Positions 2,701 through 52,534 of a DNA stretch of 64,000 bases are shown here, in pieces. The notes below the pieces were generated by a model. It was not told the DNA's origin, did no database searches, and worked only from the letters and a program-made list of their open reading frames with translations. The position numbers and the translations under genes are program-made. The DNA comes from Octopus sinensis. Lineage: Eukaryota. The DNA lies in the NCBI RefSeq assembly GCF_006345805.1, contig NC_042997.1:21638001-21702000 (forward strand), given 5' to 3'. Within the stretch, counting starts at the first letter, position 1, and every line of letters starts with the position of its first letter.

Positions 2701-3397
2701 TCCTAATGAACATTACTGACAATTTGTCATCTCTTATGTGCATGAGTTATGTATTGTACTGAAACAATCTTATTTACTCTTAATAAAGTTTTGTCTACTT
2801 TGTTTTTTTTTATATTCCGAGCTTTAGTTTATCATTTATATTTTGTTTAGAAGAACTGCTTATACGTTGTGTTCTATAGTTTCTTATTTATGATAACGAA
2901 AGTATTATTAAATCTCAGAACGAGATGTAAACAGTAATCGCTCGACAATGTAAAGTATGAAAGCCATCTCAATATGGCTAACCACAAAGGGGGGTGTTAC
3001 TGTAGGTTTTTAGCCCCAGGAGATCATCGTCTCCAGCTGGCTTCAGATACACTTTCTGTGCTCTTCAGGTATTTGCAAAGGGAGGCCATCCCTTTCTCGT
3101 AAGATTATTGTCTCTTATCAACGGGCGGTAACCACCAGATCACGATTAATTCTTTATTACGATTATAAAATCAGTACATAGAAGAACAATACAGGACATA
3201 CATACAAAAAACAGTTAAGTGGTTCGTTTAAAAATTTCCAAAATATATGGATTATTCATTATACAAAAAACTGTATTTAAATTGTCCTTTGCATTGACTA
3301 ATATAACATTACATTAGATTGAAATTTTACCGATATATTTTAAACCCCGGCAACCTATAAGGCCCCGCAGCTTCCCTTTCCTCTTCTCCATCCTTTG

Positions 3398-6300
3398 TTA
3401 AACTGGGTTTCTGACACCCACCTTTTTCACCACTTCCTTCCATCTTTTTTCATACACACTTCGTGGTAAGGTCTTCTTTTCCAGCTCCATTTTGCTCTTC
3501 AGATGATATCTGAAGTAAGTGAGCAAGCCGGGGCCTGAGACAAAGGATCCTATTGCGACTCCTTCCATTCTTGTACGCCACATGCATTCTTTTACTACTG
3601 CAACCGTGCAGTGAAAACATGCCTCACCTTCCTTCGAGAGTCCAGTTGGCGGTATCATCTTAATCATAGACTCAGCCGACAGCTGTACTCGTCCCAGATG
3701 CGATAACACGTGTTCTGCGTAACTTATCAAGTCTGACAACTGCCGACAGTGTACAAAAGCGTGCTGGACGGTTTCATCGTCCAACCCGCATCTTGGACAT
3801 GTCGGTGGCACTGAAATTCCGTGCTGCGATAACTTCTCGCGAACAGGTAAAGCATTCCTATAACACTGCCAGGCGAGGGATCTTTGGAAATTATCCAAAT
3901 ACCCCGTCCTGAAAGTCTTTTTAAACAGGTTGGTAAGCTGGTCCTAGGACGTCGTCGTTCTTTGCCTCTACCAGCCTGCTATAAAATACCGAGGTGGTAT
4001 TTCCGCAGCCGGCCTTGCCCGCCTTGTGGATCAGCGTGTGCGCCTGTCGGCACTCCTTTTGCCATAAAGTCAGATTCCGTCTTTTGATGCAACCGGGTTT
4101 AAAATTCACTAAGGAAGCCGGTCTCGGGAAAAATTCCCCTGCCAGCGGACTCCACACCTTATCACCCTCCAGGTGGTGCCAGAGATGCTTCAGTCTCAAC
4201 GCATGTCTGCGCATCATCAACCAAGGCATTCCTAATCCACCCTTTAACGGTTCCTGGCAGCAAACGGAGCGCCTCACAAGTGGCATTCCTCCCTTCCACA
4301 AAAAGCGGAAAAGGATTCGCTCCAACTTGCTAAGCCATGAATCGGGGCAAGGGACAACGGTCAGGCGGTAAGTGATTACAGATGCAATAAACATCTGTAC
4401 CACCTCCGCCCTTCCTTTCAAGGACAGAAACCTTCCGGACCAGGTCCGTACTATGGCCTCCACCTTGCCCGTCACCTCACTCCAATTCCTCTCCGTTTGG
4501 GAGTCTGGCCCAAACCAAACTCCTAGCAACTTAACAGGACCATCTGTCAAGTGTCCCACGGCACTGGACGATATCGACTTGCTTCTCCAGGTGCCGAGGC
4601 GTAAGCCAATCGACTTGTCCTTGTTAACTTTTGCTCCTGCCACCCCCTCGTATCCTCTGATAGCATCTTCTACACAAGGTAGCTGAGCCTCATTGGACAC
4701 GATGATGGTGACGTCATCCGCATAAGCAGAAACCGTCCTCCTGCCTCCGATCTCATCCGGGTTACTTCCCAGCCTCTCCAACTTTCGCAGCAATGGCTCG
4801 AGAGCCAACACGTACAAAATTGGTGACAAGGGGCAACCTTGACGAACTGAACATTCGATCGAAAACGGTTCCGTTAGGTAACCGTTTATCTGGACGGTGG
4901 ACTTGATGCCGCTATACATTGCGGAGATCCACCCGCGAAATTCAGGGCCCAGTCCAGCCGCTTCGAGGACCGTCGCCAGGTACTTATGGTCTACCCTATC
5001 GAACGCTTTACTTTGGTCTAGATGGACCATTACCCCACCCTTGCCGGTTAATTTACCCACCCTATCTAAGGTGTAGCGTATAAGGTGAAGATTGTCCTGG
5101 ATCGACCTACCTGGAATTGCACATGTCTGTGCTTTCTCTACAAGTTTCTCAACGACAGTCGTCAACCTTTTTGCCAACACCTTGGCCAAAATCTTTAACT
5201 CTACATTAAGTAGAGTTATGGGCCTGTAATTACTAATGTTATACCCCTTGCTCGGGTCTTTCTGGATTAGCGTCACCACTCCCCGGCTTACAGAACTGGG
5301 AATTCTCCCGTTCTGCTGCCAGTTCGCGTAGACGCCTGCCAGTATTCCCCCGAACAAGTCCGGCATACTTTGAGAAAACTCGTAGGACAGACCATCCAGC
5401 CTCGGCGACTTCTCCCCGGCGCATCCGGCCAGTACCCCCTCTATCTCCGCGGGAATGATCGCTCCTTCACAGCACTCCACCTCACGCCCCGAGAGCCGCG
5501 GTCCGCCGGCTAGGAAGTCCTTTAAGGCCCTCCCCCGCTCCAGCGACCCCCCCCCCTCCGAACGCACGGGCGAAATGCTGGTGAAGAAACTTTTGCATCT
5601 CCTCCTGTCCATAGATCTTGTGTCCCTCTTCGTCAGTTAAAGACTTGATTGAAGCTTTGTTGCCTCTCTAACTCTCCACTCGACGGGCCCATCCGGCAAC
5701 GTTAATACCTTCTCGTTTCCCTGCGCGTAGCTTAGCTCTAACTCTGCAACGTTCGTTTTTGGAGTTAAGGTGACGGTACAATACCGTCCTTGCCGCCATC
5801 ACTCCGGATGCAGAGCCAGATTCCATTGCCTCGTTTAGATTCTTAACTAAATCGTCCTCTATCCTAGACCTATCTAACCTTAGCTGATTGCTAAATCTAA
5901 TGGACTCTGAACGAATGGCTCTTTTGAGGGAGTGCCACCATCTATTGTTAATGATGGTGCCACATAATGCCCTTAATCCGGGTACGGAAGTCTTCACAAT
6001 TCAAAATAGACTTGTTCAGCTTCCAGTACCCGGGTCCCTGTCTATGACACTTATCTAATTGCACCCTACAAGTCACAAATTTGTGATCCGTGTAAGGCAC
6101 AATGTGAAACTGTGGACAACTAAACGTATCCTTATCTCTTTTCCTAACGAATATCCTATATATATACGATCTGCGTGAGCCGGCGTTGTTACTCCACGTC
6201 CACTGTGGAACGCTCGGCTCATCCAGTCGATAATGGTCTACTAGATTAAAGCTCTCTAGTAGACCCTTGAGGCTAAGGTTCCCCTTCCTATTGGTTGAGC

Positions 6301-6751
6301 CAACACTGTCGACCCGCGCTTCGAGGACAGTGTTAAAGTCTCCTACTAAGACTACCGTTTTCGACGTCACTAAAAAGTGCTCCAGATTCCGAAAAAAACC
6401 CGACTGCCTACACTCATTCGGAGCATAGACAGCTACCAACCTGAAGGACTGTTTACTTACGTGGGTCACATCCAGAACGACCAGCCTGCCTTCTGGGTCC
6501 AGAAAGACAGTACTTACCTGCAAGTCCAAGCTCTTCCTGATAAGGACTGCCACGCCCCTTCCTCCTCCTCGGCTAGGAGAAATAAATTTCTCGAAACCAT
6601 TTAGAAGAGGCGAGAACGCTTGGGCCCCATTCATCTTGGACTCGGTTACAATAGCTACGTCCACTCCGTGTGTCGTGAGGTCGTTCAGGAGACAAATTTG
6701 TTTCCATTTCGACCCCATTCCACGCACATTCACACAACCCAGCTTTGCCAT
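3398..6751 (-). pseudogene. Tx1-like ORF2 (AP endonuclease, reverse transcriptase, zf-RVT), 3 frameshifts
   Basis: 5948-6751: NVRG, TE, YAPN, GDFN, TDH (SRID appears as SYIY). 3921-5612: NYRPITLLN, DQSKAFDRV, VRQGCPLSP, YADD. 3398-3898: CPRC...ETVQHAFVHC. Confidence 0.9.
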
Positions 6752-6780
6752 TGTCGGAGAGAGAAAAAATAAATAAACTC

Positions 6781-8215
6781 ACGGTTGGGACAAGGAGCAT
6801 GACAGTTTAAATCTGCATGCTTCCCCTTCTTCCACCCTTGTGGTCGTAGCTGCAGGGCTCTTAACCGGAGTTGCCATCGGGCTCTGTGTAGGTGTGGTTG
6901 CCGGGGTTATAGTAAGTTTGCCCTCCAGTATTTCGTTAGTTACGTCTCTGATAAGGTTATTTTAAAAATGTTATTGGAGTGTTTTTTCCTTCCACTCGTC
7001 TTCCTTTATTTTTGCAAAACGAGTGGTCGACTTAGTGTCTGCAGACTTACTGAATAATTTCAGTTTCGAAAATTTAAAATACTTGAACACTCTATCGTTT
7101 TTCTCGTCGAATGCTACAATCTTTTCATTTTTTTTAATCAATTTTTTCCAATCTTGTTTTATGGGGAGGGGCTTGGCGAACTGTGTTCCAATGAATACAG
7201 TGCCGTGGGGGATAGGGCTGGGGAATTTGTTTTGTATGTATCTCTGCGGTGTTTGCTGATTTTTTCTTTGTTTGGGGAGGGGAGTCCAGGGTATTTTCTT
7301 TTTTTCTTTTGTGTGTCACCTGTGTAAATTCCATTAGTTCATTTTTATCTTCCGTTTCGATTGCCTTCCTTGTCGCAGTCTTGGGGTCTTTTTCCGCCTT
7401 TCCTTTTTCTGTGTTTGAAGCACTTTGAGGAGGGGCTTCGCTGTTTTTCTATTTTTTTATGCAGTTCGAGCGGACGTGACCCTTTTCACCACATTTGAAA
7501 CACCTAGGTCTGCGCCCCTCCACTGACACTCTCATTGTAATTCCCTCCTCAATAAATACCCTATCGGGTAAGTTTTCTAGCACATTATTTTCTGCTTGAA
7601 CTAGGAGTTCAAGCGCTTGTCCCTTCCAGTTTACCTCCTCTTTCCTTTTCATCTGCAGAATTGAGACTTTCTGCTCTACGTCGTGCAGAACCGCCGCTGC
7701 TACCCACATTATATCATATCCTCTTGGAATGTCTTCCACATATAGTTTCGCAGTTCTTTTTCCCATATAGGTAGGTAGTAACATGATGTCCTCACTTTTT
7801 AAGGTCATCGATGAAATCTCTCTTGCCACATCAGCCGAGTCGAAATGTGCTTCAACGGTAGCGCTGCGGGTACCTCGACCGACGTAGCGAATTTTGCTCC
7901 ACACCGGGGACAAGCACTTCTCTACTATTTCGTTCTTCACGTCCATTATTTTTTCTCTTTGTTACTGTAAACCTTGTATACGACTGTCTTGGCCTTTATT
8001 TCCTGTAATATCGCTTGCGGCGGTACCAGTTTTATTTCGTTGCCTTCCTTTTTTACCAAGTTCCGGTATTCGAACAACTGTTCTATTTTAAATTCTACTT
8101 CCGTTACGGTTCCGCCCACTGCGGCCGAAAAAGACTGTTTTTTAACCTCGATATCCTTCTGTTCGCTTTTTCCCATCACGGGAAAGTCGCTCCTCGACGC
8201 CAAATCGAACTCCAT
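6781..8215 (-). pseudogene. Tx1-like ORF1 (gag-like, zinc knuckle), split by frameshifts
   Basis: ORF pieces 7946-8215, 7449-7946 (CFKCGEKGHVRSNC) and 7134-7334, followed by a Lys-rich and a Thr/Pro-rich tail. Confidence 0.8.
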
Positions 8216-10113
8216 TTCTCAAATTATGAGAACCAATTTTTCAATAATAAAAAAAAAAAAATTACTCCGAAGGTAATAACAATGTTTATACACAGAATTT
8301 TCAGCCCCGTAGGGCGAAAATACTGTCACACAACGAACAACTGTTCAAATTCACGAGCAAACACAAACAACGACGAACAAAAAACGAACTCACTCAACAA
8401 AATAGGCAGCTAACTTCTCAATATGCAGATGAAAGAGGGGTCCCTAGACGAGTCAAAACACCAGATCACGATGAAAGACAAGGCCTGTTTGCAAATATAT
8501 AAGAGTTTTCCTAGTGACGTCTGCCACTGATTTCGAAAAACTGACTGTAAGCATTATTAAATCTCAGAACGAGATGTAAACAGTAATCGCTCGACAATGT
8601 AAAGTATAAAAGCCATCTCAATATGGCTAACCACAAAGGGGGGGTGTTACTGTAGCTTTTTAGCCCCAGGAGATCAGCGTCTCCAGCTGGCTTTAGACAC
8701 ACTTTCTGTGCCCTTCAGGTATTTGCAAAGGGAGACCACCCCTTTCTCGTAAGCCTGAGTGATACGCACCGGACCGGTTATTATACTTTACATTGTCGAG
8801 CGATTACATCTCGTTCTGAGATTTAATAATGCTTACAGTCAGTTTTTCGAAATCAGTGGCAGACGTCACTAGAAAAACTCTTATATATTTGCAAACAGGC
8901 CTTGTCTTTCATCGTGATCTGGTGGTTACCGCCCGTTGATAAGAGACAATAATCTTACGAGGAAGGGATGGCCTCCCTTTGCAAATACCTGAAGGGCACA
9001 GAAAATGTGCCTAAAGCCAGCTGGAGACGATGATCTCCTGGGGCTAAAAAGCTACAGTAACACCCCTCATTTGTGGTTAGCCATATTGAGATGGCTTTTA
9101 TACTTTACGATAACGAAAGTGGGTTCCGAAAAAGTTCATGTGGTAAAAGGACTCACAAAGGAAGATACATTGTCTCACACAATCAAAATTCACGACACCA
9201 AAACTGTTCATTATCCCAGTAAATAACCTATTTCAAATTAGTTTCTCACCTTGACAAACTCTTCAAATTTTTTTCCTAAAGGAATTTGCCCAGTACTAAG
9301 AATACATTCTACGTGTCATTTGTTTTAACACTGAAAACGCTTCTAACGTCCTCAGCGTGAGGGAACCTTGCAGATAACCATCTTTTTCATGTCACAGAAT
9401 TTCTTTTTCCTTTCTCATCGTGCTTCTTTATAATTACGGCATAGCCAGATCTGTCAATAACTTTCTTTCACTAAGGTACACATTCAGTGGCCTCTTGTCC
9501 CTTTTTACTTAAGTCAAGTTAATGTTATTTAACTTGAAAGCAAAGCAAGGAATACCATTCTATGTTTCCCATTTTGTGCATCCTCACGGTGAGAAATGTA
9601 TTACAAGACCGCCCTACTGTAGATTTTCTTTGTCTAATTCTAGTGGTGGTAACATTCAATGATCTTAGATAATTCTACCCACCATATTCTGCCTTATCTT
9701 CATTAAAGTTCGACGATAAAAGTATTTAAGGACTAGGTCGAAGATATTCAACCTGATCGTAGGCCTACTACCCACTAAACGCCTTTGAAATTGGTGTTGC
9801 TTCCTCATTGCACTAGCACCATATAGATAACATTTGAGCTCACTCTATTCTGGGTTAAGTTGAGTTAATTAGCTGTCTTTTTGTAATTGTAAAAGTCACG
9901 TTTCGTTAGAGCCATGGTGTTTGAAAACTAAAAAGGAAATAGAATCTTAATTCAATTGCTGAGACAAGTATAAATCATAAAAAAGTTACGTTTATGTTTC
10001 TAAATAATAACTTGAATTTCCACTGTGAAAATATCGAGAAAAAAAAACCGGCAAAACAACTGCAGTTTTAGGTCACTAGTTGAGCACAATTATTCGTAAA
10101 GGTTGTACCTCAC

Positions 10114-20806: not shown

Positions 20807-21459
20807 ATATATATATATATACGTGTGTGTGTGTGTGTGTGTATGTGTGTCTCGCAACGTGCTGTCGCTAACATAATTTCCTTCTGATCATATCACTGTC
20901 AATATCACCAGTTCACTGCAAAAAGTAATGAAGGAAGTTATATGCTTAACTTACGTGTGATAAATTCAAATCTGTCATAAGTGTTGTGACTACATTTGCT
21001 CCAACTATCCTGCAAAAATAGGTCTCGTTCTTTATCTAATCAAATCTAATCAATACCCATTGGATAAAATTGATTTGCTTTGTTAGCTCACTGCGTTGAC
21101 AGTAAATAATCCCATTTAAGCACAATAGAAGCCCACATAGTAGATATCTCTCTCCTTGAAATTATATATTACAATCTTTCTTTGAAGTTTATAACTAATT
21201 CCGAAATATTAAACTGTTGACACTGTTCCATGCAAATGCATAAAATGAAAAAAAATACTAAAGCAACTAACTCTATCTGCAAATTACTTTACAGATGCCA
21301 CATCATTTCATCACGTTTTTTTTTACCTTGGCTGCGTTAAACGGTAATTTAGAAGAATTTTGATGAATTTTGATTAATCGGTTTTGCTGAATATACAGCC
21401 CACGACCAAAGATTGAGATAATTACTTGTTTATAGTGACATTTGTGATATATATATATA

Positions 21460-21740
21460 TCAATAATATTTATAGTAGTAATTCTCCTAGTTGCAATTGT
21501 AGAGTTATGTCCCACTGTCCGTTATTAGGCCGAATTTATAAATGTACAATCTTAACTATAACTGGTAACTTTATATATAGGATGTTTTGTTTATATGGAA
21601 AAAAAAAACGTATTTATAGCCATTTTTCCTCTTTTAGACTCAAACATAAACAAATTCTATGTAATTTTCTCTCTCTATTGTTGAAAATGTTGGTATATAA
21701 ACAAAATTTATCTTTTTGGTTATAATATCTTTCTTGATAA
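21460..21740 (+). mobile_element. Penelope-like element relic (Cys linker plus GIY-YIG endonuclease)
   Basis: CNCRVMSHCPLLG...IYKCTI...FIY and HFSSFRLKHK match the PLE at 35690-37600. Confidence 0.6.
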
Positions 21741-22980: not shown

Positions 22981-23994
22981 ACGTTATACTTAATATTTAA
23001 TGTCTTATCGTTGCCCTCTTGTAATTGATGCGTATCTTCAAAAAAATCTTTTTACTTTTATCCTATTTATATAAATTTGATACCTCTTCATTTTTATACT
23101 AATATTATTTATATACTCTATATTTCTTACTCCGCTATCCTTCAAAGTCTTCCTCTATTAATATTATGGTAATTATTAACGGTTGGTCAGCTTTCTTTCT
23201 TTCTTTTCTCCTTATCCTCCCGTCTCTGTTCCTCACTTATTACTGGCCTTGGCCTTGTCGATTTTTGGAGATAAAGCTTGTATATTTGGTTCCAACACAA
23301 ATGACCTTGACATAGTAGTAGGGTGACCTGACCTCAAATCATTTTCTTACCACTGACCAGTAGACATTAAACAACTCCTTAACAGATAAACCTAGATTAG
23401 TGGAGCCGAGCCCTCCTCTCTTGTTAGAAATAAAGATAATTGGGTGACTAGTTTACTATTCCTTCCCCCTCCTAAAATCTCTATTAAGCACTAAATTTCT
23501 TTAGTTTGATCAAATTTATTCTATTCCGGTAAATGCATTCCGTCAATTGAAATAGTAGCAGAATCAATCAACATATATTTTTGCTCTGGGGATTTTAACT
23601 ACGTGAAATCATTTGAGTGTCCTTTACTTTGATATTCATGAATTCATCTGATGAAAACGGTTTCTTTACAATGGTGTAATGTTTTCATTAATCAATTAAG
23701 GGAGTCATAAGAAACGGTTGTAATGGATTAACACCCGTACCACTATTGTTACTCATTTATATATACATGTTTATACATACATATACATATATACATACAC
23801 ACACACGCACGCACTCGCGCGCACACACACACACACACACACATACACACCACACACACACACTTTTGCGTTCATCTGCATATATATCAGTATCGATCTA
23901 CTACCATATATGCATGCACCCAAAGAGTATATGAATATACTTAAGTTACCACGTTTGTATATTCATGGATATATGAATTTATGCATTTATGTAC

Positions 23995-24030
<36 letters not shown>

Positions 24031-24034
<4 letters not shown>

Positions 24035-25119
24035 ACGAGTGCAGTGAAGAATTCCGGGTAGAGGTTGGGGTCCACCAAGGTTCAGTCCTCAGCCCCCTCC
24101 TATTTATCATAGTCCTCCAGGCAATAACGGAAGAATTTAAGACAGGATGCCCCTGGGAGCTCCTCTATGCTGATGACCTTGCTCTAATTGCTGAGTCACT
24201 ATCAGAACTGGAGGAGAAGTTTCAGGTGTGGAAACAAGGATTAGAATCGAAGGGCCTTAGAATCAACCTAGCCAAAACCAAAGTCCTAATAAGTAGGAAG
24301 GTGGACCAACCACAAACGACTTCAGGTAGATGGCCCTGCTCGATCTGTAAAAAAGGTGTAGGTAGAAACTCTATAAGGTGCACCAAGTGTAAGCTATGGA
24401 CACATAAGAGGTGCAGCAATGTCAAAGGTAGGCTAACTGGGAAGATAGTTTTCGTATGTGGCAGATGCTCAGGAGAAATAAACACTGGAAATGTGCAGAG
24501 ACCAACTTCTACCACGTTCCAGGGAGACAAACTAGAAGTAGTTGATAGCTTCCGCTACCTAGGAGACCAAGTCAGTAGCTGGGGTGGGTGTGCTGAAAGT
24601 GTAACTGTTAGAGTAAGAATAGCCTGGGCAAAGTTTAGAGAGCTCTTACCCCTGCTGGTGACAAAAGGCCTCTCGCTCAGAGTAAAAGGCAGACTATATG
24701 ATGCATGTGTACGTACAGCCATGCTACATGGTAGTGAAACATGGGCCGTGACTGCTGAGGATATGCGTAAGCTCGCAAGAAATGAAGCCAGTATGCTCCG
24801 ATGGATGTGTAATGTCAGTGTTCATAATCGTCAGAGTGTAAGTACCTTGAGAGAAAAGTTGAACCTAAGAAGCGTCAGTTGTGGTGTGCAAGAGAGACGG
24901 CTGCGCTGGTATGGTCATATGACGAGAATGGCTGAAGATAGTTGTGTGCAAAAGTGCTACACCCTAGCAGTTGAGGGAACCTGTGGAAGAGGTAGACCCA
25001 GGAAAACCTGGGACGAAGTGGTGAAGCACGACCTACGAACTTTAGGTCTCACCAAGGAAATGACTAGAGACCGAGACCTATGGAAGTATGCTGTGCGTGA
25101 GAAGACCCGGCAAGACTAG
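24031..25119 (+). pseudogene. RTE reverse transcriptase C-terminal half with an inserted C4HC3 (PHD-like) finger
   Basis: GVHQGSVLSP, LYADD, FRYLG, LHGSETW, LRWYGH, GRPRKTW. The ORF track start at 23989 is a TA-repeat artefact. Confidence 0.9.
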
Positions 25120-25724
25120 TCAGGCCATATCCCGTGGCCCCTACCTGGGACGTAGTCAGTCCACCTGTGCATACCTTCCTTCTTGTGACACTTGTGAAGA
25201 CCTGTTGAGGCAAGTGAAAATCAAACAAAATCAAAATAGATGAACATCAATGGAATTTGTATCTTTGTGGTACCAGTGCCGGTGGCACACAAGAAAACCA
25301 TCCGAACGTGGCCGTAGCCAGTACCACACCGACTGGCCTCCATGCTGTGGGCACGTAACAATCACCATCCAATCGTGGCCGACCGCCAGCCTAATCTGGC
25401 TCCTGTGTCGGTGGCACATAAAAAACACCATCTGAGCGTGGTCGTCTGCTAGCCTTGTCTGGCACCTGTGTCAGTGGCACATAAAAACACCATCCGAGCG
25501 TGGCCGTTCGCCAGCCTCGTCTGGCACCTGTGTCGGTGGCACATAAAATCACCCACTACACTCTCGGAGTGGTTGGCGTTAGGAAGGGCATCCAGCCATA
25601 GAAACACTGCCAGATCTGACTGGCCTGGTGCAGCCTTCGGGCTCCCCAGACACCAGTTGAACCGTCCAACCCATGCTAGCATGGAAAGCGGACGTTAAAT
25701 GATGATGATGATGATGATGATGAT
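24031..25724 (+). mobile_element. 5'-truncated RTE-clade LINE with 3' UTR and (GAT)n tail, inserted in (TA)n
   Basis: Open RT frame to 25119; the 3' UTR has about 65-70 bp internal repeats; ends GCGGACGTTAAAT(GAT)n; TA arrays on both sides. Confidence 0.92.
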
Positions 25725-30642: not shown

Positions 30643-33525
30643 TCAAACAAACTGAAAAAGTTTTTTTGGAAAATGTACAATTCTGCCACTTCTAGTCTTT
30701 TTCACATCTGTAGGTAATTTCAAAATTGACTTTGTTTTTCCATTAACATTGGATTTGTTTCTTTGAATATCACTTTGTTTCAAGTTATGTTGATATGTAT
30801 TGCTCATATCTTCATTTTCATGACATGAATGTTGGTCGAAATAAGCTTTTTTTACTCTGTCGACACTGACAATTTCTTTTTTACCATTCATCTCCAAAGT
30901 CATAGTTTTGTCTCTAACTGACAAGACTTTAAAAGGTCCGGTGTATTTATTTTTCAGTGAATTATGAGCAGCATCTTTACGTACAAATACATGTGTCCAA
31001 GAATTTCTATCAGAAGGAACAAAACTTTTAACATTTTGCAATTTTCTTGTAAAGGAAGGAATATCCGTAAGAAATCTCCTAAGACGAGTTACATAATCAT
31101 TAACATTTCCATTAAAAGAATTAGTTTCTTCGAACATTTGAGCAGGTAGAGTTAATGTTGTTCCGTACAAAAGTTCAGCAGGAGAATATTGTATATTTTC
31201 TTTAACAGCAGTTCTAATTCCTAACAATACCACTGTTAGAATCAGAATAAGTTCTTAATGATGATTTCAACTGCCTATGGAACCTTTCTATCATTCCGTT
31301 AGATTGTGGGTGATATGAAGTTGTACGAATTCTATTAATCCCCAACAATTTATTGAATTCTGCGAACAGGCTAGACTCAAATTGCCTACCACGATCTGTT
31401 GTCACTGTATTTGGTATGCCAAATTTAGACATCCAATTGGTAAATAAAGTTTTCGCTATAGTTACTGCAGATACGTCCTTTATCGGATAAGCCTCCGGCC
31501 ATCTCGAAAAACGATCTATACACGTCAACAAATATATATTATCCTCACATGGAGTTAAGGGTCAACTATATCGATGTGGATATGTTGGAATCGCGCATCT
31601 GGATTTGCAAATGTACCTAATGGTGCTTTGATATGACGCTGTACTTTGGATTTTTGACACTGCATACATGACTTGACCCAGGAACGAACATCTTTATTCA
31701 TACCAGGCCAAACAAAACGACTTGATATCAACTTCAATGAAGCTTCTATACCTGGATGAGATAAATTATGTAAGCTAGAAAAAACATTTTTTCTATGCTT
31801 TTCAGGCACAAATGGTCTCGAAAAACCTGTAGAAATATCACACCAAATATGTGAATTACACGAATGGATCGGCAACATTTTAAATTTTAAAGAAGTTGAA
31901 TTGGAATTTTTATATAAAGAAAATTCTTTATCTGCAACTTGATCCTTAGACATTTCTTCCAAATTTATAGTGTTTAATGAATTTAATGCATCTACATTCA
32001 TTCTAGAAAGTGCATTTGCTGCTGAATTTTCAACACCCTTGATATAACGTATATCCACAGTAAATTGTGAAATAACATCAAGGTGTCTAATTTCTCTAGG
32101 AGAATATTTCTCCGAAGAACTTTTTAATGCATATGTTAACGGTTTATGGTCAGTGAATAAAGTAAATGACCTACCTTCAAGAAGATGTCTGAAGTGTTTA
32201 ATTGACAAATAAGCTGCCAACATATCTCTGCCGAAAACACTGTATTTAGTTTCTGGTGCTTTGAATTTTTTTGAAAAAAATGCTAATGGTTGGCAGGAAT
32301 TACAACGAAATTGCTGCAGAACGCCACCGATTCCAACATCGGAAGCATCAACTTTTTCTGGTAATGGTCGAATTCCATCTTTATCTATAAGATGACCCAG
32401 AAAAGATATAGTGGGTTCACCAAAAACACACTTCGATGGATTTATCACAATGCCAAAATTCGTCAATCTTTCGAAAATTTTTTTAAAATGTTCTTCATGT
32501 GTTTCTTCTGATGGACTAGCAATGAGAATATCATCTATATAAGCAAATACGAAAGGTAAATTTCTTGTTACTTCGTCCATAAATCTTTGGAAAGTGTTTG
32601 CTGCGTTCCTCAATCCGAAAGGCATGCGAAGAAATTCAAATAAACCAAATGGAGTGGTAATCGCTGTCTTCGGTATATCATTTTCTGCAACAGGAATTTG
32701 ATTGTATGCTCTGACTAAATCAATTTTTGAAAAAATATTACAACCGCTCAAAGAAGTTGCAAAGTCCATAATGTGGGGTATCGGATATTTGTCTGCTTTT
32801 GTTTTTGCATTAAGTTGCCTGAAGTCTCCACAAGGTCGCCAGTCTATAAGATTTTTCTTTACCATAACTAATGGTGTTGACCAGCTACTACTGGAAGGAC
32901 GGATTATACCGAGATCCATCATATGACGAAATTCTGCCTTAGCCACCTTCATTTTTTCAGGAGATAATCTTCTCGGCTTAGAAAAACTTGGTGGTCCTTG
33001 TGTGACGATGTGATGTTCTACCGAATGCACACACTTGGTATTTGGAGCTAACTGTTTCGTGATATTCGGATAATTCTTCAAAATCCTGTGATATCTATTT
33101 TCCGAGGATGCTATGAAATACAATGGACTAACTGTGCTTTTTCTAAATCTCATTCCTTGAATTTTTAATGAAGTTTCTGTGTCTATCAATTTTTGTTTTT
33201 TAACATCTACCATTAAATGATAGTGTGCCAAAAAATTTGCTCCTAATATTGGATATGGTAAATCTGCTACTATGAAGATCCATTTATACTCTCTTTTTAA
33301 ATTTATATCTAGAGTTAAGCTAATCTCTCCAAATATTTGGATTTCAGATTGATTAACTGCTTGAAGAGTCAAATATACAGGTTTGGTTTTTTGTTTTAAA
33401 AGCTTTACAGGCCAAATTGAACAAGCTGCTCCTGTATCAACTAAAAACCTTTCTTTCGAATCTAAGTCATAGATGAAAAATACGCGACTCTTTATGATGT
33501 TATCCACATATTTCGTCGCATTCAA
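30643..33525 (-). pseudogene. Gypsy pol (protease, RT, RNase H, integrase) with frameshifts and an in-frame deletion
   Basis: [38 protein letters not shown]...C..C zinc finger, HIDIV, TDRGRQFES, GMIERFHRQLK. Confidence 0.92.
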
Positions 33526-34224
33526 TCTGCGGTTCAGAAGTTTCCCGAATTTTTCTTTTTTGTGTTTAGGAAATCAAATGCACAAGGTTTAATACATTTG
33601 AATGATTTGTCTCCAAATTTTGCATGGTACCAACATATGGCGTTTCTCTTGAAGCTTGGGCTCCTTGATCTCCTGCGCCATCTTGTATTATTTCGTTGAA
33701 AAGAGGTTTAAACTTTCGAGGTTTAAACTTTCGAGGTTTAAACTTTCTATTTTTTTTTGTTAATAACTCAAATTGTTTTTCGTAACAATTTTTTAACTCC
33801 TGTATTTCATTTGAAATAGATGGAATTGCATTCACAGATTCTTTTGACGATAATTACAGAATACTGTCTGCTAAATCTGCCAACTGTTGAATGAAGGTTC
33901 GGTTTTTAACGGCCGAAAGCAAAGTTTTATATGGCAATTTAGTGAAAAACACTTCTTTGAGATGAGATTCTTCTATCTGCTGTCCTCCCAGAAGTTCATT
34001 CATCCTTCGCAGAAGTTGTGTGATTTTTTTCTCCCAATTCTTCATGGTTAAATAAGTTCGCAAATTCTTTTTGTTTCGAATTTGATGTTCGTTTCAATAT
34101 TTCCTCTTTAATGGAAGAATACGAAACTAGTTCGAGAGGGGTTAGTAGCAAATCTCTAATTTCCTTACTTAGAGGTGGAGGTAAATTGCTAAGCATTATA
34201 TTGTATTTCTGTTCTTCATTTGTA

Positions 34225-35552
34225 AACTTTTCGAAAATTTTTGGGGAAAATTTTCTCCAAAAATTTTTAGGAAATTTTCACCGAATACTTTCAACAAAAA
34301 TTTTTCGAAAATTTTCACCGAAAACTTTCCCCAAAAATTTTTCGAAAATTTTTAACGAAAATTTTACGCAAAAATTTTTCGAAAATTTTCATCGAAAATT
34401 TTCCACGAAAATTTTTTGAAAATTTTCACCGAAAATTTTCCCCAAAAATTTTTCGGAAATTTTTGAAAATTTTGACCTTTCTCCAAAAATTTTTGGAAAA
34501 CTTGCTCCAAAAATTTTTCGAAAATTTTCACCGAAAATTTTCCCCAAAAATTTTTCGAAAATTTTCAACGAAAATTCTCCCCAAAAGTTTTTTGAAAATT
34601 TTCACTGAAAATTTTCCCAAAAATTTTTCCAAAATTTTCATCGAAAATTTTCACTGAAAATTTTACCAAAAAATTTTTTGAAAATTTTCACGGAAAATTT
34701 TCTCCAAAAATTTTTCGAAAATTTTCACCGAAAACTTTCCCCAAAAAGTTTTGGAAAATTTTCACCGAAAATTTTTCCCAAAAAACATTGATTTTTCGAA
34801 AATTTTTGCCATACTTTGTGATTTTGGCACCGCTGGCCTTCCATACTTTGTGATTTTGGCACCGCTGGCCTTCCATACTTTTTACCTAAAAATTTTTACG
34901 AAAATTTTCACCGAAAATTTTCCCTGAAAATTTAACCAAAATATTTTTCGAAAATTTTGGGGGAAAATTTTCTCCAAAAATTTTTAGAAAATTTTCACCG
35001 AAAACTTTTCCCAAAAATTTTTCGAAAAATTTCACCGAAAATTTTACCCAAAAAATTTCGAAAAATCACAAAGTATTTTTCTCCAAAAATTTTTGCCAAA
35101 AAATACTTTGTGATTTTTATAAAATTTTTACGCAAAAAAAGTATGGCCCTCCATACTTTGTGATTTTGGTGCCGCTGGCCTTCCATACTTTTTCCAAAAT
35201 TTTCAACGAAAATTTTCCCCAAAATTTTTGGAAAATTTTCACCGAAAATTTTCCACAAAAATTTTTTAAAAATTTTCACCGAATATTTTCCACAAAAAAT
35301 TTTTCGAAAATTTTCACCGAAAATTTTGTCCAAAAATTTTTAGAAAATTTTCACCGAAAACTTTCCCCAAAATTTTTTTGAAAATTTCAAGGAAAATTTT
35401 CCCCAAAAACTTTTCGCAAAAGATACTTTGTGATTTTCGAAAATTTTTGCCATACTTTGTTATTTTGGCACCGCTGGCTTTCCATACTTTGTGATTTGGC
35501 ACCGCTGGCCTTCCATACTTTGTGATTTTGGCACCGCTGGCCTTCCATACTT
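34225..35552. repeat. Composite minisatellite: about 36-37 bp AAAATTTT-based unit interleaved with a 32-bp unit
   Basis: Unit 1 about AAAATTTTCACCGAAAATTTTCCCCAAAAATTTTTCG. Unit 2 CCATACTTTGTGATTTTGGCACCGCTGGCCTT at about 34809-34880, 35150-35190 and 35450-35550. Confidence 0.9.
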
Positions 35553-35686
35553 TTTTGCCGATAACACTCCCCGGACCCTAAGTAAGGCATGTGTAAAATT
35601 TGAATGAAATTGGTTGTATAGTTCTCAAGTTTTAGGGAAACACACAGACAGACAGACACACATTCTCAGTTTTATATATATAAAGA
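35553..35686 (-). mobile_element. Helitron-like (Lep1-type) non-autonomous 5' end
   Basis: Host A then TCTTTATATATATAAAACTGAGAATGTGTGTCTGTCTG...AACCAATTTCATTCAAATTTTACAC, the TC start plus microsatellite architecture known from Lep1-type Helitrons. No CTRR 3' end seen. Confidence 0.6.
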
Positions 35687-35689: not shown

Positions 35690-36158
35690 GTTTCGAATGT
35701 ACTTAACTGTGCGGGTGATGCTATGCACGCATGATACCCTTAGATCTAATCTATTGTTAATAAGGTTGTTCTTGTCTCTGTACTTAAAAATCTCGTAAAT
35801 TTCCATAGAACAAACTCACACCCACATGTACTATCTCTGTAAGGCTGCGCCCTCTGTATTATAACCCAACTAGTTCCGCTTTCCTTAAGTTCCCAGATCT
35901 TACTAAAGACGTACTATTAGCTTTATGTCTAAGCCTAAACGATGAAAGATGTTTATTAATGCGATTATCTTTTTTCATGTTTATGAAACACCCAATATAG
36001 ATAAAACTACCAGTTTTAGTAACAATTGTACATCTGTAAACTGCGTTTTAGATTAAACAGCGACCCAATAATGGGCAATGGGATTTTACACTACAATTGC
36101 AACCGGGAGCATTACTGCTACTAATACTATTAATATTCATATCATTGTTATTATTATG

Positions 36159-47286: not shown

Positions 47287-47612
47287 AGGAAATTTAGATA
47301 TACTGAAATGGAGCATGGTCTGCTAATAAAGGAAGAAGGAAGTGAGTGGGATGATACACATTAAGCGCAGTTCTCTAAACTATATTTTTTCTCTTTATCT
47401 TTTACTTTTATATTCATGTTTTATGGTTATTATTTATTTTGAAATTGCTTAAAGTTTCTTTTAAATTCTCTTTAACCCCAGGAGATATATTAGATAAAGA
47501 CCTTTACAATCTAAAATGTATACTCTCATGATTACCACAAACATTTTTATAGAGAATCAAATAAATTGTATATGTAAGTGTGTCTGTGTGTATTTCCGCT
47601 ATTGTGCTGATA

Positions 47613-48635
47613 ATGTGCTATTTATTTTTCTGTCTATACATTGCAAAAGGATTTACTTTTGTCTCTTCATTCTATCAACAGATCATTCCAGGATCGGCGA
47701 CAATTCCAACAGAGTTTTCTAACACATATCAACTGAAGCTCAGGGAAACAATTAATAGCAAATTGTTTCAAACAAATCCCATCAAGGAGAAACAACAAAC
47801 AAAAGCACCACATTTACTATCAAAAGGTCTTAAATTTTCAAGAAATTTAGCCAAAAAAAGACCAGGGCTATTTTCATTGATCGCAACGAGAGAGCAAAAC
47901 TTTAAACGGAAACAATTACTAAATGGTCAGTGTCAGCGACATGGTGTCAGACGCCCTCCGCTTAATTATCTGATGCTTGTGAACCACCAACATAAAATGG
48001 TATTCTGCTACATCCCTAAAGTTGGCTGCACATTCTTTAAACGCCTTATGTTGATTCTCAATGGGAAATATCAGAATGTTTCTAGTCCGTATGATATAGC
48101 ACCAACCAAAATACACATGTTGCCAATAGATCTCCTTTCGACTCGTCCCAGAGAAAATGCCGCAGTCTTGAGGGCTTACAAGAAAGTAGTTTTTGTTCGG
48201 GATCCTTATACACGCCTTTTTTCAGGTTATCTCGACAAAATTTTCATGCCACGACAAATGTTTAAAACCCTGTGTACTTATATTATTAAAACTTTCAGGA
48301 AAAGTGTGGTTAAAAATTCAAGTATTATATGTCCTCTTGATGTAACTTTTGAAGAATTTTTGCGTTATGTCATCCATTCAAATCTGAAGAATGTAAAAAA
48401 AAATTATCATTTTGGTATGATGCATGATCTGTGTGGTACCTGTAATATCAAGTATGATATCATAGGGAAACTCGATACTTTTGTCCCTGATTTGAATTTA
48501 ATGTTTGAAGAAATTGGTGAAGGTCATAGAATGTCAGCCAAAAATATGGTAACTGAGAGAGTTGGAGATGATCTTACAGTTGTCGTTGACCACGCCTTTC
48601 ATAACAAGAATAATACATGTGTGGATTTCTCGCAA
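47613..48635 (+). CDS. Carbohydrate sulfotransferase (Sulfotransfer_2 family, CHST11/HNK-1ST-like), main exon; 5' boundary uncertain
   Basis: 5'-PSB motif CYIPKVGCTFFKR, 3'-PB motif FVRDPYTRLFSGYLDK, HF..MHDLC..CNIKYDIIGKLDT; phase-0 donor CAA|GTAAGT at 48635/48636. First in-frame ATG is 47613; alternative acceptor near 47683. Confidence 0.88.
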
Positions 48636-49139
48636 GTAAGTGACAAGCCTTGTATGTCTTTATTTGAAAATAGTGACCTACTTAATAATCCGCCACAAAT
48701 TAAGTAATGAATTGGTTTGCTTTCTTTTTTAATTAGCGAGAGTATCATAGGCTAAAGGTAAGCTCACAAAAAGCTGCATCTGTAAGCTGTTTTCATCTTT
48801 GTTTACTGTCACACAAAATCATTAAAAGCATGAAAGACAAGCAGTTTCATTTCGTACTGTGCTCTAAAATCGACACTTTTTGTTATTTAATAAATTCCCA
48901 TTTTACATAGAGAGATGGCCATTATGTCGAGTTGATCACCCTGTAACAATAGTTAAGCTACCGGGAAAACTAGGATGCAACCCAATTTCAACTTAGACCA
49001 CTCTGCTACAAATGATTGTATGAAAATAGGAGTTCTAATGTGTGCTCCTTTTTCTTGTTAGATATAAGCCATTGTGCTTAATAAAAATGTTTAATCGATA
49101 TTGTTGTGAATGTTCGTAGTCTTCGATATACGCACTATT

Positions 49140-51122: not shown

Positions 51123-51682
51123 TACTCACACGTATACACACATAAACACGGACACATATGCTCGCACGCACACATACATATGTACACAGACACATGTATA
51201 CACACACATGCACAACACACACACACATATAAATACAGACACAAACTCACGCATACAGGTGCGCACACATGCATACACGCGCGCATTCCACTGAATCGGC
51301 CTTGAATGTGACAGGCTACGTATTGTATTTTGTCAATTCTGGAAGGATCAAAGCTGAAGTCACCTTCTAACAGATATTGCATTAAAATATAACACAGTGG
51401 ACTTTAAACATTGCATGCCATTGTCTATGCCAACCTAACATAACAGCCGTTTCTAATACAGGTATGAATATATGGGTGTTGATTTTTATATATTTTAACT
51501 CTAGAAAGTTGATGGACAAAGCAGAAATCCGATGGCATTTGAACATCGAACATAAAGCCTCACAACTCAACAATGTATTTCATTCCGTCTGATAATCTAC
51601 CTATTCTTTTAATTCGACATTCTATTGAAATTGATTGAACATTGTTTGGAATTTATTTTATGTAAGACTATAACCATTTATA

Positions 51683-52016
51683 ATAGTTGTATACTGTCAA
51701 TTTAACGTGACAGTAGGGGATTACACTACCGTTGTTTAGCCCTAGGAAGCATCGAACGCTTCCTGTCGACTTTGACACATTTACTGTGTCCTTATATATA
51801 TTTACGAAGGGGAGACGAATACCCCCAAATACATCCCCTTCGTAATAAGGACACAGTAAATGTGTCGAAGACGACAGGAAGCGTTCGATGCTTCCTAGGG
51901 CTAAACAGCGGTGGTGTAATCCCCTACTGTCACGTTAAATTGACAGTATACAACTATTATATCGCCCCACCACTGTACATATCTCTATGAGATATTTAGA
52001 AATTTAATATTTCTGA
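51683..52016. mobile_element. Short palindromic non-coding element, diverged relative of the 2904-9108 unit
   Basis: 14-bp direct repeat TATAACCATTTATA at 51669-51682 and 52017-52030; about 112-bp inverted arms at about 51680-51794 and 51844-51960. Confidence 0.8.
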
Positions 52017-52534
52017 TATAACCATTTATAGTTGTGGATTGATAAAATTTGAAAAAATATATGGTATATGTGATACCTTTGAATGAAACCCAAAATAAAG
52101 AAATTGTATGTGTTTGTGTGTGTGTGTGTGTGTGTGTGCGTGAGAGAGAGAGAGAGACCGACAGACAGACAGATTATAAATGTTCGTACTTATTTTATGA
52201 ATTATATATATTTGGAGTGTTATATAAAATCTTATTCGAAAATATTATTGAGCAATAAAAATCATTATCTAAAAACTAAACCATAATTATAAATCATATA
52301 TCGTATTAATTTGTATACAGTCGCAAAAATTACTTTTCTATGCAGTCAAAAAATTTGCCGGGAGGTATAGAGAATTTCATCGTCCTAGTTACTCTCCAAC
52401 CAAACGAAGAATAAATATAAATTTGCGTTCGGTCGAATTTCAATTTCAGAACATAAAGGGAAATAACTCCATACTGCAAACCAATAAATCCTGTAACTTA
52501 TCATTTCTGTAAATACACAGCCGTATATTCTCTA

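What the first reader, a model, noticed from the sequence alone, without database searches (positions are those of the whole stretch)
8460..8753. Two diverged repeat families conserve the same hairpin series: candidate undescribed structured RNA
Seen: this unit and the element at 51683-52016 share order and anchors (GGGG, TTTAGCCCYAGG, CTTT(A)GACACA, TATTT, CGTAA) while stems change sequence but keep pairing: AGCCAT/ATGGCT vs TACTGTCA/TGACAGTA; GGAGA/TCTCC vs GGAAGC/GCTTCC; GACACA/TGTGCC vs GACACA/TGTGTC; AAAGGGA/TCCCTTT vs AAGGGGA/TCCCCTT; ATCTC/GAGAT vs ATATCTC/GAGATAT. On the opposite strand the first family reads CUGAAG-stem-UAAA-stem-UA, resembling but not matching a hammerhead core. Inference: selection on RNA structure, possibly a ribozyme variant or an RT-recognition scaffold. 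The fourth hairpin in the second family lies at the palindrome centre and could be a by-product.
Basis: partly seen in the sequence, partly recalled or inferred. Interest (0 to 1): 0.8.

Follow-up and report, generated by a model that had tools for sequence, protein, structure and literature searches.

The report
Hairpin-rich ends of Penelope-like retroelements
Two related families of small mobile-DNA copies in what looks like a cephalopod genome share a series of hairpins, which is most likely the RNA handle that a Penelope-type reverse transcriptase binds and starts copying from; it is a transposon feature of a known kind, not a new RNA gene or ribozyme.

Summary
The unit at 8460-8753 and the element at 51683-52016 are homologous: profiles built from one family find the other at E 1e-5 to 3e-8 and find nothing else in the window. 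They keep the same hairpins, with four compensatory double changes. Neither is a free-standing RNA gene. Both are retroelement insertions with perfect target-site duplications of 12 and 14 bp. Once a nested LINE (3147-8459) is removed, family 1 is 1.6 tandem units of 323 nt followed by an inverted unit. Family 2 is a direct copy plus an inverted copy. In both, a 46-55 nt tail sits at one end only, and the tail-less inverted arm stops at the same aligned nucleotide. Partial tandem, adjacent inverted 5'-truncated copy and one-sided tail are the published signature of Penelope-like element (PLE) insertions, whose protein nicks and extends both DNA strands and starts reverse transcription at two internal RNA sites. 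I read the hairpins as the 3' binding and initiation module of a non-autonomous PLE, with helices II and III of a decayed hammerhead. No Rfam ribozyme matches. No RT/GIY-YIG partner and no further copies could be retrieved, so covariation rests on two lineages.

The parts
2892..2903 (.). Left copy of the 12-bp target-site duplication GATAACGAAAGT that flanks the whole family-1 insertion
   Evidence: Identical 12-mer at 9109-9120, directly abutting both element ends
2904..2949 (-). Family-1 'tail': 46-nt 3'-terminal extension holding hairpin 5. Present at this end only.
   Evidence: It lies outside the long inverted repeat of the LINE-free element and is homologous to the family-2 tail
2950..3108 (-). 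Family-1 hairpin module, copy c3 (hairpins 1-4, TTTAGCCCCAGG anchor)
   Evidence: 95% identical to 8599-8753; alignment A1
3109..3146 (-). Linker L and first bases of segment A5' of the 323-nt unit. It ends in the left copy of the LINE's target-site duplication (3133-3146).
3147..8459 (-). Nested LINE, not part of the element. It has ORF1 with a CCHC knuckle, AP-endonuclease, RT and zf-RVT, and is flanked by the 14-bp duplication CACCAGATCACGAT (3133-3146 / 8459-8472).
   Evidence: Pfam hits; junction sequences; removing it restores a continuous 879-nt element
8460..8552 (-). Segment A5' of the family-1 unit, with a TATA-like box at 8496-8503
8553..8598 (-). Second copy of the tail at the junction of the two tandem units. 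Holds hairpin 5 at 8561-8575 and one strand of the long-range helix at 8580-8586.
   Evidence: Direct repeat with 323-nt period in the LINE-free element
8599..8753 (-). Family-1 hairpin module, copy c1, the core of the finding. Hairpin 1 at 8611-8628; long-range helix partner at 8647-8653; anchor at 8659-8670; hairpin 2 at 8669-8684; hairpin 3 at 8696-8712; hairpin 4 at 8727-8745.
8754..8775 (.). 22-nt filler at the head-to-head junction of the direct and inverted copies
   Evidence: It matches neither arm
8776..9108 (+). Inverted full unit of family 1 (module copy c2 at 8954-9108). It lacks the tail and ends 13 nt from the GCCA of hairpin 1.
   Evidence: Inverted repeats I1-I3; alignment A1
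9109..9120 (.). Right copy of the 12-bp target-site duplication
51669..51682 (.). Left copy of the 14-bp target-site duplication TATAACCATTTATA of the family-2 insertion
   Evidence: Identical 14-mer at 52017-52030
51683..51813 (-). Family-2 inverted, tail-less arm (hairpins 1, 2, 3). Its outer end is 13 nt from the GTCA of hairpin 1, the same alignment column as the outer end of the family-1 inverted arm.
51814..51833 (.). 20-nt unique centre of the family-2 palindrome
   Evidence: Spacer of inverted repeat I2
51834..51961 (+). Family-2 direct arm. Hairpin 3 at 51850-51866; hairpin 2 at 51876-51896; anchor at 51894-51905; long-range helix strand at 51905-51916; hairpin 1 at 51925-51948.
51962..52016 (+). 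Family-2 tail, 55 nt, at one end only. Long-range helix partner at 51965-51976; hairpin 5 at 51979-51995; extra terminal hairpin at 51996-52016.
   Evidence: It lies outside the inverted repeat but inside the duplication
52017..52030 (.). Right copy of the 14-bp target-site duplication

Best explanation
Both loci are insertions of two diverged subfamilies of a small, non-coding retroelement mobilised by a Penelope-like element (PLE) reverse transcriptase/endonuclease. That makes them solo-pLTR or retrozyme-like non-autonomous PLEs without a working hammerhead.

That is the window minus strand for 2904-3146 and 8460-8753, and the plus strand for 8776-9108 and 51834-52016.

The shared 3' module of about 200 nt is a set of stem-loops:
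- hairpins 3 and 2 side by side, arranged like helices II and III of a hammerhead whose core has decayed;
- a long-range helix enclosing hairpin 1;
- hairpin 5.

Inferred mechanism:
1. The PLE protein binds this module.
2. It cuts both target strands with a 12-14 bp stagger.
3. It primes cDNA synthesis from both 3' ends on multimeric RNA.
4. It starts either just 3' of hairpin 5 (copies with the tail) or just 3' of hairpin 1 (tail-less copies).
5. The two cDNAs meet head to head, which gives the inverted repeat.

Selection to keep the module foldable explains the compensatory changes.

Shown: homology, hairpins, compensatory changes, target-site duplications, tandem/inverted/tail architecture, and absence of any known ribozyme.
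Inferred: the PLE partner, the sense strand, the function of each hairpin, and the hammerhead ancestry.
For: 1. Retroposition. Each insertion is flanked by a perfect duplication, 12 bp for family 1 and 14 bp for family 2. The lengths differ, as in target-primed reverse transcription.

2. Architecture. With the nested LINE removed, family 1 reads: tail, unit, tail, module, 22-nt filler, then an inverted unit without the tail. The direct period is 323 nt. Family 2 reads: tail-less inverted arm, 20-nt centre, direct arm, 55-nt tail.

3. Shared boundary. The tail-less ends fall in the same alignment column in both families, 13 nt from G(C/T)CA of hairpin 1.

4. Match to published PLE insertions.
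- Partial tandems, an adjacent inverted 5'-truncated copy, and a 30-40 bp tail at one end, stated as not seen with LINEs (PMC8557442).
- A 31-bp tail on one of the inverted pLTRs, an inverted pLTR 37 bp shorter, 8-10 bp duplications, a TATA box in the pLTR, and pLTRs sufficient for mobilisation in trans (PMC3846280).
- The PLE protein nicks and extends both strands and starts RT at two internal sites, and the tail is the stretch between them (PMC11167929).

5. Hammerhead-like arrangement. The family-1 sense strand reads CUGAAG-stem-UAAA-stem-UA. The counterpart of the cleavage site lies 62 nt (family 1) or 54 nt (family 2) upstream of the internal start, counted from the sequence. In the anole PLE the distance is 85-92 nt.

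6. Non-autonomous PLEs and HHR-less PLE clades are known. Naiad-clade remnants are reported in Octopus and other cephalopods.

7. Pairing constraint. G.U pairs at two positions on the proposed sense strand would be A.C mismatches on the other strand.

8. A TATA-like box at 8496-8503 in the non-shared part of the unit.
Against: - No RT + GIY-YIG reading frame is linked to either family. The only GIY-YIG-like traces in the window (about 36.0 kb minus strand, 21.5 kb plus strand) are below the Pfam threshold (E 0.17) and are not adjacent to the module.
- The tails are 46 and 55 nt, longer than the published 30-40 bp.
- There is no canonical hammerhead.
- There is only one insertion per family, so the tandem/inverted/tail pattern is seen twice, not across a population of copies.
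- Family 1 does not fold better than shuffled sequence.
- One mismatch in the family-2 long-range helix (C.A) would be a G.U on the other strand, so strand evidence is about 3 to 1, not clean.
- No further copies could be retrieved from any collection.
Confidence: 0.6

Rival explanations
1. SINE-like elements, or 5'-truncated LINE 3' UTRs, mobilised by an AP-endonuclease LINE. The hairpins would be a 'stringent' 3' recognition structure. The inverted halves would come from twin priming or snap-back synthesis on tandem transcripts.
For: Target-site duplications of 12-14 bp are typical of LINE-type integration, and the nested LINE in the same locus made a 14-bp one. LINEs are abundant in the window. 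Stringent LINE/SINE pairs with conserved 3' stem-loops are established knowledge (for example UnaL2/UnaSINE1; from my own knowledge).
Against: - Twin priming inverts a different, upstream part of the template at variable points. Here the inverted arm repeats the same region and ends at the identical homologous nucleotide in two diverged families.
- A one-sided tail and tandem/inverted complexes are reported as not seen with non-LTR elements (PMC8557442).
- There is no tRNA, 5S or 7SL head.
- There is no similarity to the 3' end of the LINE in the window or to the other LINE-related loci fetched.
Confidence: 0.2
2. A self-standing structured non-coding RNA or a new or variant self-cleaving ribozyme, copied around the genome.
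For: Compensatory changes occur in three hairpins. Family 1 has a hammerhead-like order of core letters and stems. PLE hammerheads are known to be minimal, weak in vitro and protein-assisted.
Against: - No Rfam family matches on either strand at E<=10, even in a 116-nt search.
- Core positions A9 and G12 are missing or changed in family 1. CUGA is absent from family 2, so the core letters are not what is conserved.
- Helix I cannot be drawn.
- Both loci are transposon insertions with duplications, not conserved single-copy genes.
Confidence: 0.07
3. Fold-back DNA transposons (MITEs) whose long terminal inverted repeats carry palindromic protein-binding sites.
For: There are long inverted repeats of 117 nt (family 2) and about 330 nt (family 1). 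The short palindromes could be binding sites for a dimeric protein.
Against: The inverted repeats are not terminal. A 46-55 nt tail lies between one arm and the duplication. Duplication length differs (12 vs 14 bp) and is longer than for known cut-and-paste superfamilies (my own knowledge). Family 1 also contains a direct tandem.
Confidence: 0.03
4. The hairpins are kept by a mutational process rather than by selection for function. The process would be templated correction of quasi-palindromes during replication or reverse transcription. This rival addresses the cause of the compensatory changes and is compatible with any of the element classes above.
For: Only two lineages are available, the helices were picked after seeing both families, and family 1 is not globally more stable than shuffles. 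Intrastrand template switching in quasi-palindromes is an established mutational mechanism (my own knowledge).
Against: Stems are also more conserved in sequence than the spacers (79% vs 50%). A long-range helix spanning about 70 nt is kept with changed letters, which local hairpin correction does not explain well. The two cDNA start points sit at fixed distances from two of the hairpins.
Confidence: 0.1

Closest known systems
Penelope-like element insertions with pseudo-LTRs (Penelope/Poseidon, Neptune, Nematis, Naiad/Chlamys; PMC8557442, PMC3846280, PMC11167929)
   Same: Short variable target-site duplication; partial tandem; adjacent inverted 5'-truncated copy; extension ('tail') at one end only with a discrete tail-less terminus; TATA-like box in the repeat; AT-rich target sites.
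   Different: No RT/GIY-YIG reading frame in or next to the elements. The unit is only 323 nt. Tails are 46-55 nt rather than 30-40. There is no canonical hammerhead (as in Naiad/Chlamys).
Metazoan non-LTR retrozymes, the tandem hammerhead repeats now argued to be non-autonomous PLE derivatives (bioRxiv 10.64898/2026.07.22.740005; PMC4209133)
   Same: Short non-coding unit (published range about 170-400 nt, from my own knowledge) found in tandem. A two-stem arrangement sits where the hammerhead would be.
   Different: The catalytic core is not intact and differs between the two families. There is no helix I and no Rfam hit. Circular RNA is unknown.
Non-autonomous Chlamys elements such as MRC1 of Chlamydomonas (PMC8557442)
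   Same: Non-coding, form pLTRs and head-to-tail multicopy insertions, and lack a hammerhead.
   Different: Different kingdom. No sequence relationship was tested. For those elements, homology to autonomous partners at the 3' end is documented; here the partner is unknown.
Hammerhead ribozyme (Rfam Hammerhead_1, _3, _II, HH9, HH10; PLE 'min-HHR')
   Same: Order CUGA-N-G / stem / -AAA / stem / UA on the sense strand of family 1. The two stems are conserved in both families.
   Different: A9 is absent and G12 is replaced by U. CUGA is lacking in family 2. Helix I is not formable. No covariance-model match at E<=10.
Stringent LINE/SINE 3' recognition stem-loops (e.g. eel UnaL2/UnaSINE1; R2 3' UTR), from my own knowledge
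   Same: A conserved 3'-terminal RNA structure shared by diverged retroelement families and presumably read by the RT.
   Different: Those elements start cDNA synthesis at the RNA 3' end and do not give one-sided tails or systematic head-to-head copies.

Membership tests
Penelope-like element (autonomous) | Single ORF with telomerase-like RT plus GIY-YIG endonuclease | tested here: not met
   No ORF inside either element. ORFs of the window give a LINE, a Gypsy-type pol and a sulfotransferase. There are only sub-threshold GIY-YIG-like traces elsewhere.
PLE-type insertion / non-autonomous PLE derivative | Partial tandem giving pseudo-LTRs | tested here: met
   Family 1: 1.6 direct units with a 323-nt period after removal of the LINE. 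Family 2: not present.
PLE-type insertion / non-autonomous PLE derivative | Adjacent inverted 5'-truncated copy forming an inverted repeat | tested here: met
   Both families
PLE-type insertion / non-autonomous PLE derivative | Short extension ('tail') at one end only, reflecting two discrete RT start sites | tested here: met
   46 nt (2904-2949) and 55 nt (51962-52016). The tail-less ends fall in the same alignment column. The lengths exceed the published 30-40 bp.
PLE-type insertion / non-autonomous PLE derivative | Short target-site duplication of variable length | tested here: met
   12 bp and 14 bp, both perfect
PLE-type insertion / non-autonomous PLE derivative | 3' end homologous to that of an autonomous PLE of the same genome | not testable with these tools
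   The source genome is not in any collection. Pseudo-ORF search gave 0 hits, DNA patterns gave 0 relevant hits, and the loci fetched were negative.
PLE-type insertion / non-autonomous PLE derivative | Hammerhead motif in the pLTR (canonical clades; absent in Naiad/Chlamys) | tested here: not met
Hammerhead ribozyme | Catalytic core C3 U4 G5 A6 N7 G8 A9 ... G12 A13 A14 ... H17 | tested here: not met
   Family 1 reads CUGAAG-stem-UAAA (no A9, U at position 12). Family 2 reads AUAAG-stem-AAA. No strict match by regex; alignment.
Hammerhead ribozyme | Three helices around the core, including helix I | tested here: not met
   Counterparts of helices II and III are present and conserved. The bases flanking CUGA and the UA site cannot pair (read).
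Hammerhead ribozyme | Match to Rfam covariance models | tested here: not met
   No hammerhead family at E<=10 in 1.1 kb, 0.5 kb or 116 nt searches
Hammerhead ribozyme | Self-cleavage | not testable with these tools
   Needs a bench assay
Metazoan non-LTR retrozyme | Tandem units of about 170-400 nt | tested here: met
   323-nt unit in family 1. The full-length unit of family 2 is unknown because both arms are 5'-truncated.
Metazoan non-LTR retrozyme | Type I hammerhead in each unit, and circular RNA | tested here: not met
   Hammerhead absent. Circular RNA is not testable here.
SINE | Pol III head derived from tRNA, 5S or 7SL RNA | tested here: not met
   ARAGORN found 0 genes in the window. 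No tRNA/5S/7SL match in the Rfam E<=10 searches.
SINE | 3' tail shared with a partner LINE | tested here: inconclusive
   No similarity to the LINE at 3147-8459 or to the other loci fetched. The rest of the genome is not available.
MITE / fold-back DNA transposon | Inverted repeats at both termini directly next to a fixed-length duplication | tested here: not met
   A tail lies between one arm and the duplication. The duplications are 12 and 14 bp.

The most novel reading that the evidence does not exclude
The module is a hammerhead-derived three-way junction that has lost the canonical core yet still acts. One possibility is a protein-assisted self-cleaving variant. The other is a new kind of RNA scaffold that positions a Penelope-type reverse transcriptase at two internal start sites, each a fixed short distance 3' of a hairpin. 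That would give the first sequence-level rule for how these enzymes choose where to begin.
Probability: 0.1. Interest if true: 0.7.

Novelty: new member of a known kind. Interest (0 to 1): 0.3.

Why it matters
The value here is mainly that the finding is explained. What looked like a new structured RNA is the terminal module of a retroelement class that annotation pipelines often miss or mislabel, because its insertions are tandem/inverted mosaics.

For transposon specialists there is a modest bonus. Two diverged, hammerhead-less families keep the same hairpins and the same two termini. Each terminus lies about 8-13 nt (21 nt in the longer family-2 tail) downstream of a conserved hairpin. This gives a concrete, mutable candidate for the RNA features that direct the internal initiation of reverse transcription recently shown in vitro for a vertebrate PLE.

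It also suggests that hammerhead helices can persist as structure after the catalytic core has decayed.

Tried and rejected
1. Rfam searches. The whole window at gathering thresholds gave nothing. Three permissive searches (8200-9300, 51600-52100, 8960-9075) gave no ribozyme, tRNA or snRNA. The only hits were microRNA-precursor matches far below threshold, caused by the family-2 palindrome.
3. Getting more copies:
- Stop-free translations of family 1 used as a protein query against 5.8 billion proteins: 0 hits.
- Two different two-anchor DNA patterns against JGI metagenome contigs: 0 hits.
- Viral contigs: 0 hits.
- Prokaryote genomes: 1 hit, which is a chance match inside a bacterial contig.
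- A profile HMM over the window and over loci fetched around LINE relatives (JGI contig, ENA contig, GCA_024449705.1, Argonauta hians): only the known copies.
4. Exact look-up of the window's LINE protein: not on record.
5. Full-text search for the anchor sequences in papers: one irrelevant primer match.
6. The last protein search, used on GIY-YIG-like remnants in the hope of reaching cephalopod PLEs: one short Logan protein only.
7. Readings considered and rejected:
- LINE terminal repeats. The family-1 pieces on both sides of the LINE are one element split by the LINE's insertion, with a 14-bp duplication.
- Site-specific targeting of family 1 by that LINE. Relatives of the LINE are not flanked by the module.
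- A Pol III terminator after hairpin 1. The T-run is absent in family 2.
8. I did not build a covariance model. With two lineages and no further sequence to search, it could not add evidence.
Full report
WHAT IS IN THE SEQUENCE

The window is eukaryotic: dense microsatellites, LINE and Gypsy-type reading frames, and no tRNA or Rfam gene at curated thresholds. The best relatives of its LINE reverse transcriptase are unnamed contigs and proteins named from Argonauta hians and Acanthosepion pharaonis, at 47-62% identity. The source is therefore probably a cephalopod whose genome is not in the collections I could reach.

The unit at 8460-8753 is one piece of a larger repeat. It recurs inverted at 8776-9108 and in direct orientation at 2904-3146. 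The 5.3 kb between the pieces is a LINE on the minus strand. It has ORF1 with a CCHC knuckle, AP endonuclease, RT and zf-RVT. It is bounded by a perfect 14-bp duplication, CACCAGATCACGAT, at 3133-3146 and 8459-8472. The LINE therefore inserted into a pre-existing family-1 element.

Joining the flanks gives an 879-nt element, itself bounded by a perfect 12-bp duplication, GATAACGAAAGT, at 2892-2903 and 9109-9120. Its self-comparison shows, in order:
- a 46-nt tail;
- one full 323-nt unit (hairpin module, linker, segment A5');
- a second tail and module;
- a 22-nt filler;
- one full unit in inverted orientation that lacks the tail.

Family 2 (51683-52016) is bounded by a perfect 14-bp duplication, TATAACCATTTATA. 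It consists of a tail-less inverted arm, a 20-nt centre, a direct arm and a 55-nt tail.

IS THE RESEMBLANCE REAL?

Yes. A profile made only from family 1 finds both family-2 arms (E 1.6e-6 and 1.4e-5). A profile made only from family 2 finds all three family-1 copies (E 3.4e-8 to 4.3e-6), over about 170 profile positions from the tail hairpin to hairpin 3. Nothing else in the window scores.

On a MAFFT alignment that was not fitted to any structure, 23 pairs in four helices are 90% paired, against 23-41% when partners are slid. Four pairs carry changes on both sides that keep the pair: two in hairpin 2, one in hairpin 3 and one in hairpin 1.

Between copy c2 and the family-2 right arm, nine substitutions fall in 19 core stem pairs, as four compensatory doubles and one single. 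Random placement reaches four compensatory doubles with P about 2e-5. Stems are 79% identical, against 50% for the rest.

This is the classic intermediate.

Folding also shows a long-range helix enclosing hairpin 1 in both families: ACAGUAA/UUACUGU in family 1 and ACAGCGGUGGUG/CCCCACCACUGU in family 2. Family 2 has an extra terminal hairpin in its tail.

Caveats:
- There are only two independent lineages.
- The helices were chosen after seeing both families.
- Family 1 as a whole is not more stable than shuffles (z -0.8 to -1.6), whereas family 2 is (z about -5).
- Neither strand is clearly preferred by energy.

WHAT IT IS

The flanking duplications of different length, and the fact that the two families share one intact end while differing in how much lies beyond the module, point to integration by target-primed reverse transcription.

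Three further features are not those of ordinary LINE or SINE insertions:
- a partial tandem (family 1);
- an adjacent inverted, 5'-truncated copy (both families);
- a 46-55 nt extension present at one end only.

The tail-less end of the inverted arm falls on the same aligned nucleotide in the two diverged families, 13 nt from the G(C/T)CA of hairpin 1.

This is the published signature of Penelope-like elements (PLEs):
- Craig et al. describe partial tandems forming pseudo-LTRs, an inverted 5'-truncated copy immediately upstream, and a 30-40 bp tail at one end. They state that these are not seen in TPRT of non-LTR elements (PMC8557442).
- Arkhipova et al. describe, for Adineta vaga, an inverted pLTR 37 bp shorter than the direct ones, a 31-bp tail, 8-10 bp duplications, a TATA box readable both ways, and pLTRs that suffice for mobilisation in trans (PMC3846280).
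- Frangieh et al. show that a purified PLE protein nicks and extends both target strands and starts reverse transcription at two adjacent internal sites of the RNA. The tail is the stretch between those sites (PMC11167929).

Applied here, the plus-strand 3' end at the left duplication primed a cDNA from the distal start (with tail). The minus-strand 3' end at the right duplication primed a second cDNA from the proximal start (without tail). In family 1 both ran on multimeric RNA for 1.6 and 1.05 units. They were joined head to head through a short filler. Family 2 is the same event with both cDNAs stopping within hairpin 4.

THE HAMMERHEAD RESEMBLANCE

PLE pseudo-LTRs normally carry a minimal hammerhead (PMC4209133), located upstream of the RT start sites. 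In the anole element the cleavage site is at +26 and the starts at +111-118.

On the sense strand, family 1 reads CUGAAG - hairpin 3 - UAAA - hairpin 2 - UA. The UA lies 62 nt upstream of the proximal terminus. Family 2 reads AUAAG - hairpin 3 - AAA - hairpin 2 - UA, with the UA 54 nt upstream.

The two stems are conserved and covary, but the core letters are not conserved. A9 is missing and G12 is U in family 1, CUGA is absent in family 2, and no helix I can be drawn. No hammerhead or any other ribozyme model matches, even at E<=10 in a 116-nt search.

I therefore read hairpins 3 and 2 as the surviving helices II and III of a decayed PLE hammerhead. This is inference. Hammerhead-less PLE clades (Naiad, Chlamys) and non-autonomous PLE derivatives are known, and Naiad remnants are reported from Octopus and other cephalopods. 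A 2026 preprint argues that animal retrozymes are non-autonomous PLE derivatives.

HOW IT PROBABLY WORKS

The shared 3' module is the part of the RNA that the mobilising enzyme must recognise. Both alternative termini lie a short distance 3' of a conserved hairpin:
- Proximal terminus: 12 nt (family 1) or 9 nt (family 2) after the hairpin-1 stem.
- Distal terminus: 8 nt after hairpin 5 in family 1, and 21 nt in family 2, where the tail is longer.

The long-range helix brings the two sites together. The hypothesis is that these stem-loops position the RT for internal initiation, as the stem-loop does in the anole PLE. Selection for that fold would then explain the compensatory changes. The non-shared part of the family-1 unit carries a TATA-like box (8496-8503), as PLE pseudo-LTRs do.

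WHAT IS MISSING

- No RT/GIY-YIG partner was found. The only GIY-YIG-like traces in the window are sub-threshold and unconnected to the module.
- No additional copies could be retrieved from any collection. A proper covariation test, the distribution of termini and the identity of the partner all remain to be done in the source genome.
- The main rival is mobilisation by a LINE, with twin priming on tandem RNA. It explains the duplications but not the identical tail-less terminus in two families or the one-sided tail.
- A fold-back DNA transposon is excluded, because the inverted repeats are not terminal.
- A purely mutational origin of the compensatory changes cannot be excluded with two lineages.

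VERDICT

But the object is the terminal module of a non-autonomous Penelope-type retroelement. It is a new member of a known kind, not a new class of RNA.

Noticed in passing
window 3147-8459 (minus strand): A 5.3-kb LINE (ORF1 with CCHC knuckle, AP endonuclease, RT, zf-RVT; L1/Tx1-like domain set) with several frame breaks. It is nested inside the family-1 element with a perfect 14-bp target-site duplication. Its closest relatives are only 58-62% identical in protein (GCA_024449705.1; Argonauta hians).
   Followed up: yes
window ~35920-36145 (minus strand) and 21450-21700 (plus strand): Two 69%-identical remnants encode CxC...HCPLLG...VY.C....YIG...R..H..SFR, a weak GIY-YIG-like pattern (Pfam E 0.17, below threshold). 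They may be decayed Penelope-like endonuclease fragments. Only one short homologue (Logan) exists in the protein collection.
   Followed up: partly
window 47580-48707 (plus strand): An uninterrupted 375-codon frame with a clear Sulfotransferase_2 domain (Pfam E 1e-35). It may be a single-exon host gene or a retrocopy.
   Followed up: no
window 31555-33525 (minus strand): Gypsy-type LTR-retrotransposon pol fragment (RT, RNase H, integrase zinc-binding domain).
   Followed up: no
window 23989-25119 (plus strand) and 25350-25553: A 5'-truncated LINE RT fragment with a cysteine-rich PHD/C1-like stretch after the RT. It starts directly at a (TA)n/(AC)n microsatellite and is followed by a 63-nt tandem repeat (3.2 copies).
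   Followed up: no
window 60237-61007: Tandem array of 184/216-nt units containing GTTCCGAGTTCAAATTCCGCCGAGGTCGAC, which looks like a tRNA B-box region (SINE-derived satellite?). ARAGORN calls no tRNA there.
   Followed up: no
window 34224-35553: A 1.2-kb AT-rich satellite with 13/24/37-nt periods, interleaved with two blocks of a 32-nt repeat (CCATACTTTGTGATTTTGGCACCGCTGGCCTT). It lies immediately downstream of one GIY-YIG-like remnant.
   Followed up: no
window 58804-59455; L001 1420-2088; L003 2682-2962: This stretch is 74-77% identical to the DNA just 3' of the RT reading frames of two LINE relatives from other assemblies. It is probably a solo 3' end of a related LINE family.
   Followed up: no
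window 51679-51682 / 51958-61: The family-2 inverted repeat extends 4 nt (TATA) into the left target-site duplication. This microhomology between target and element at the tail-less junction is compatible with annealing-assisted priming or joining.
   Followed up: no
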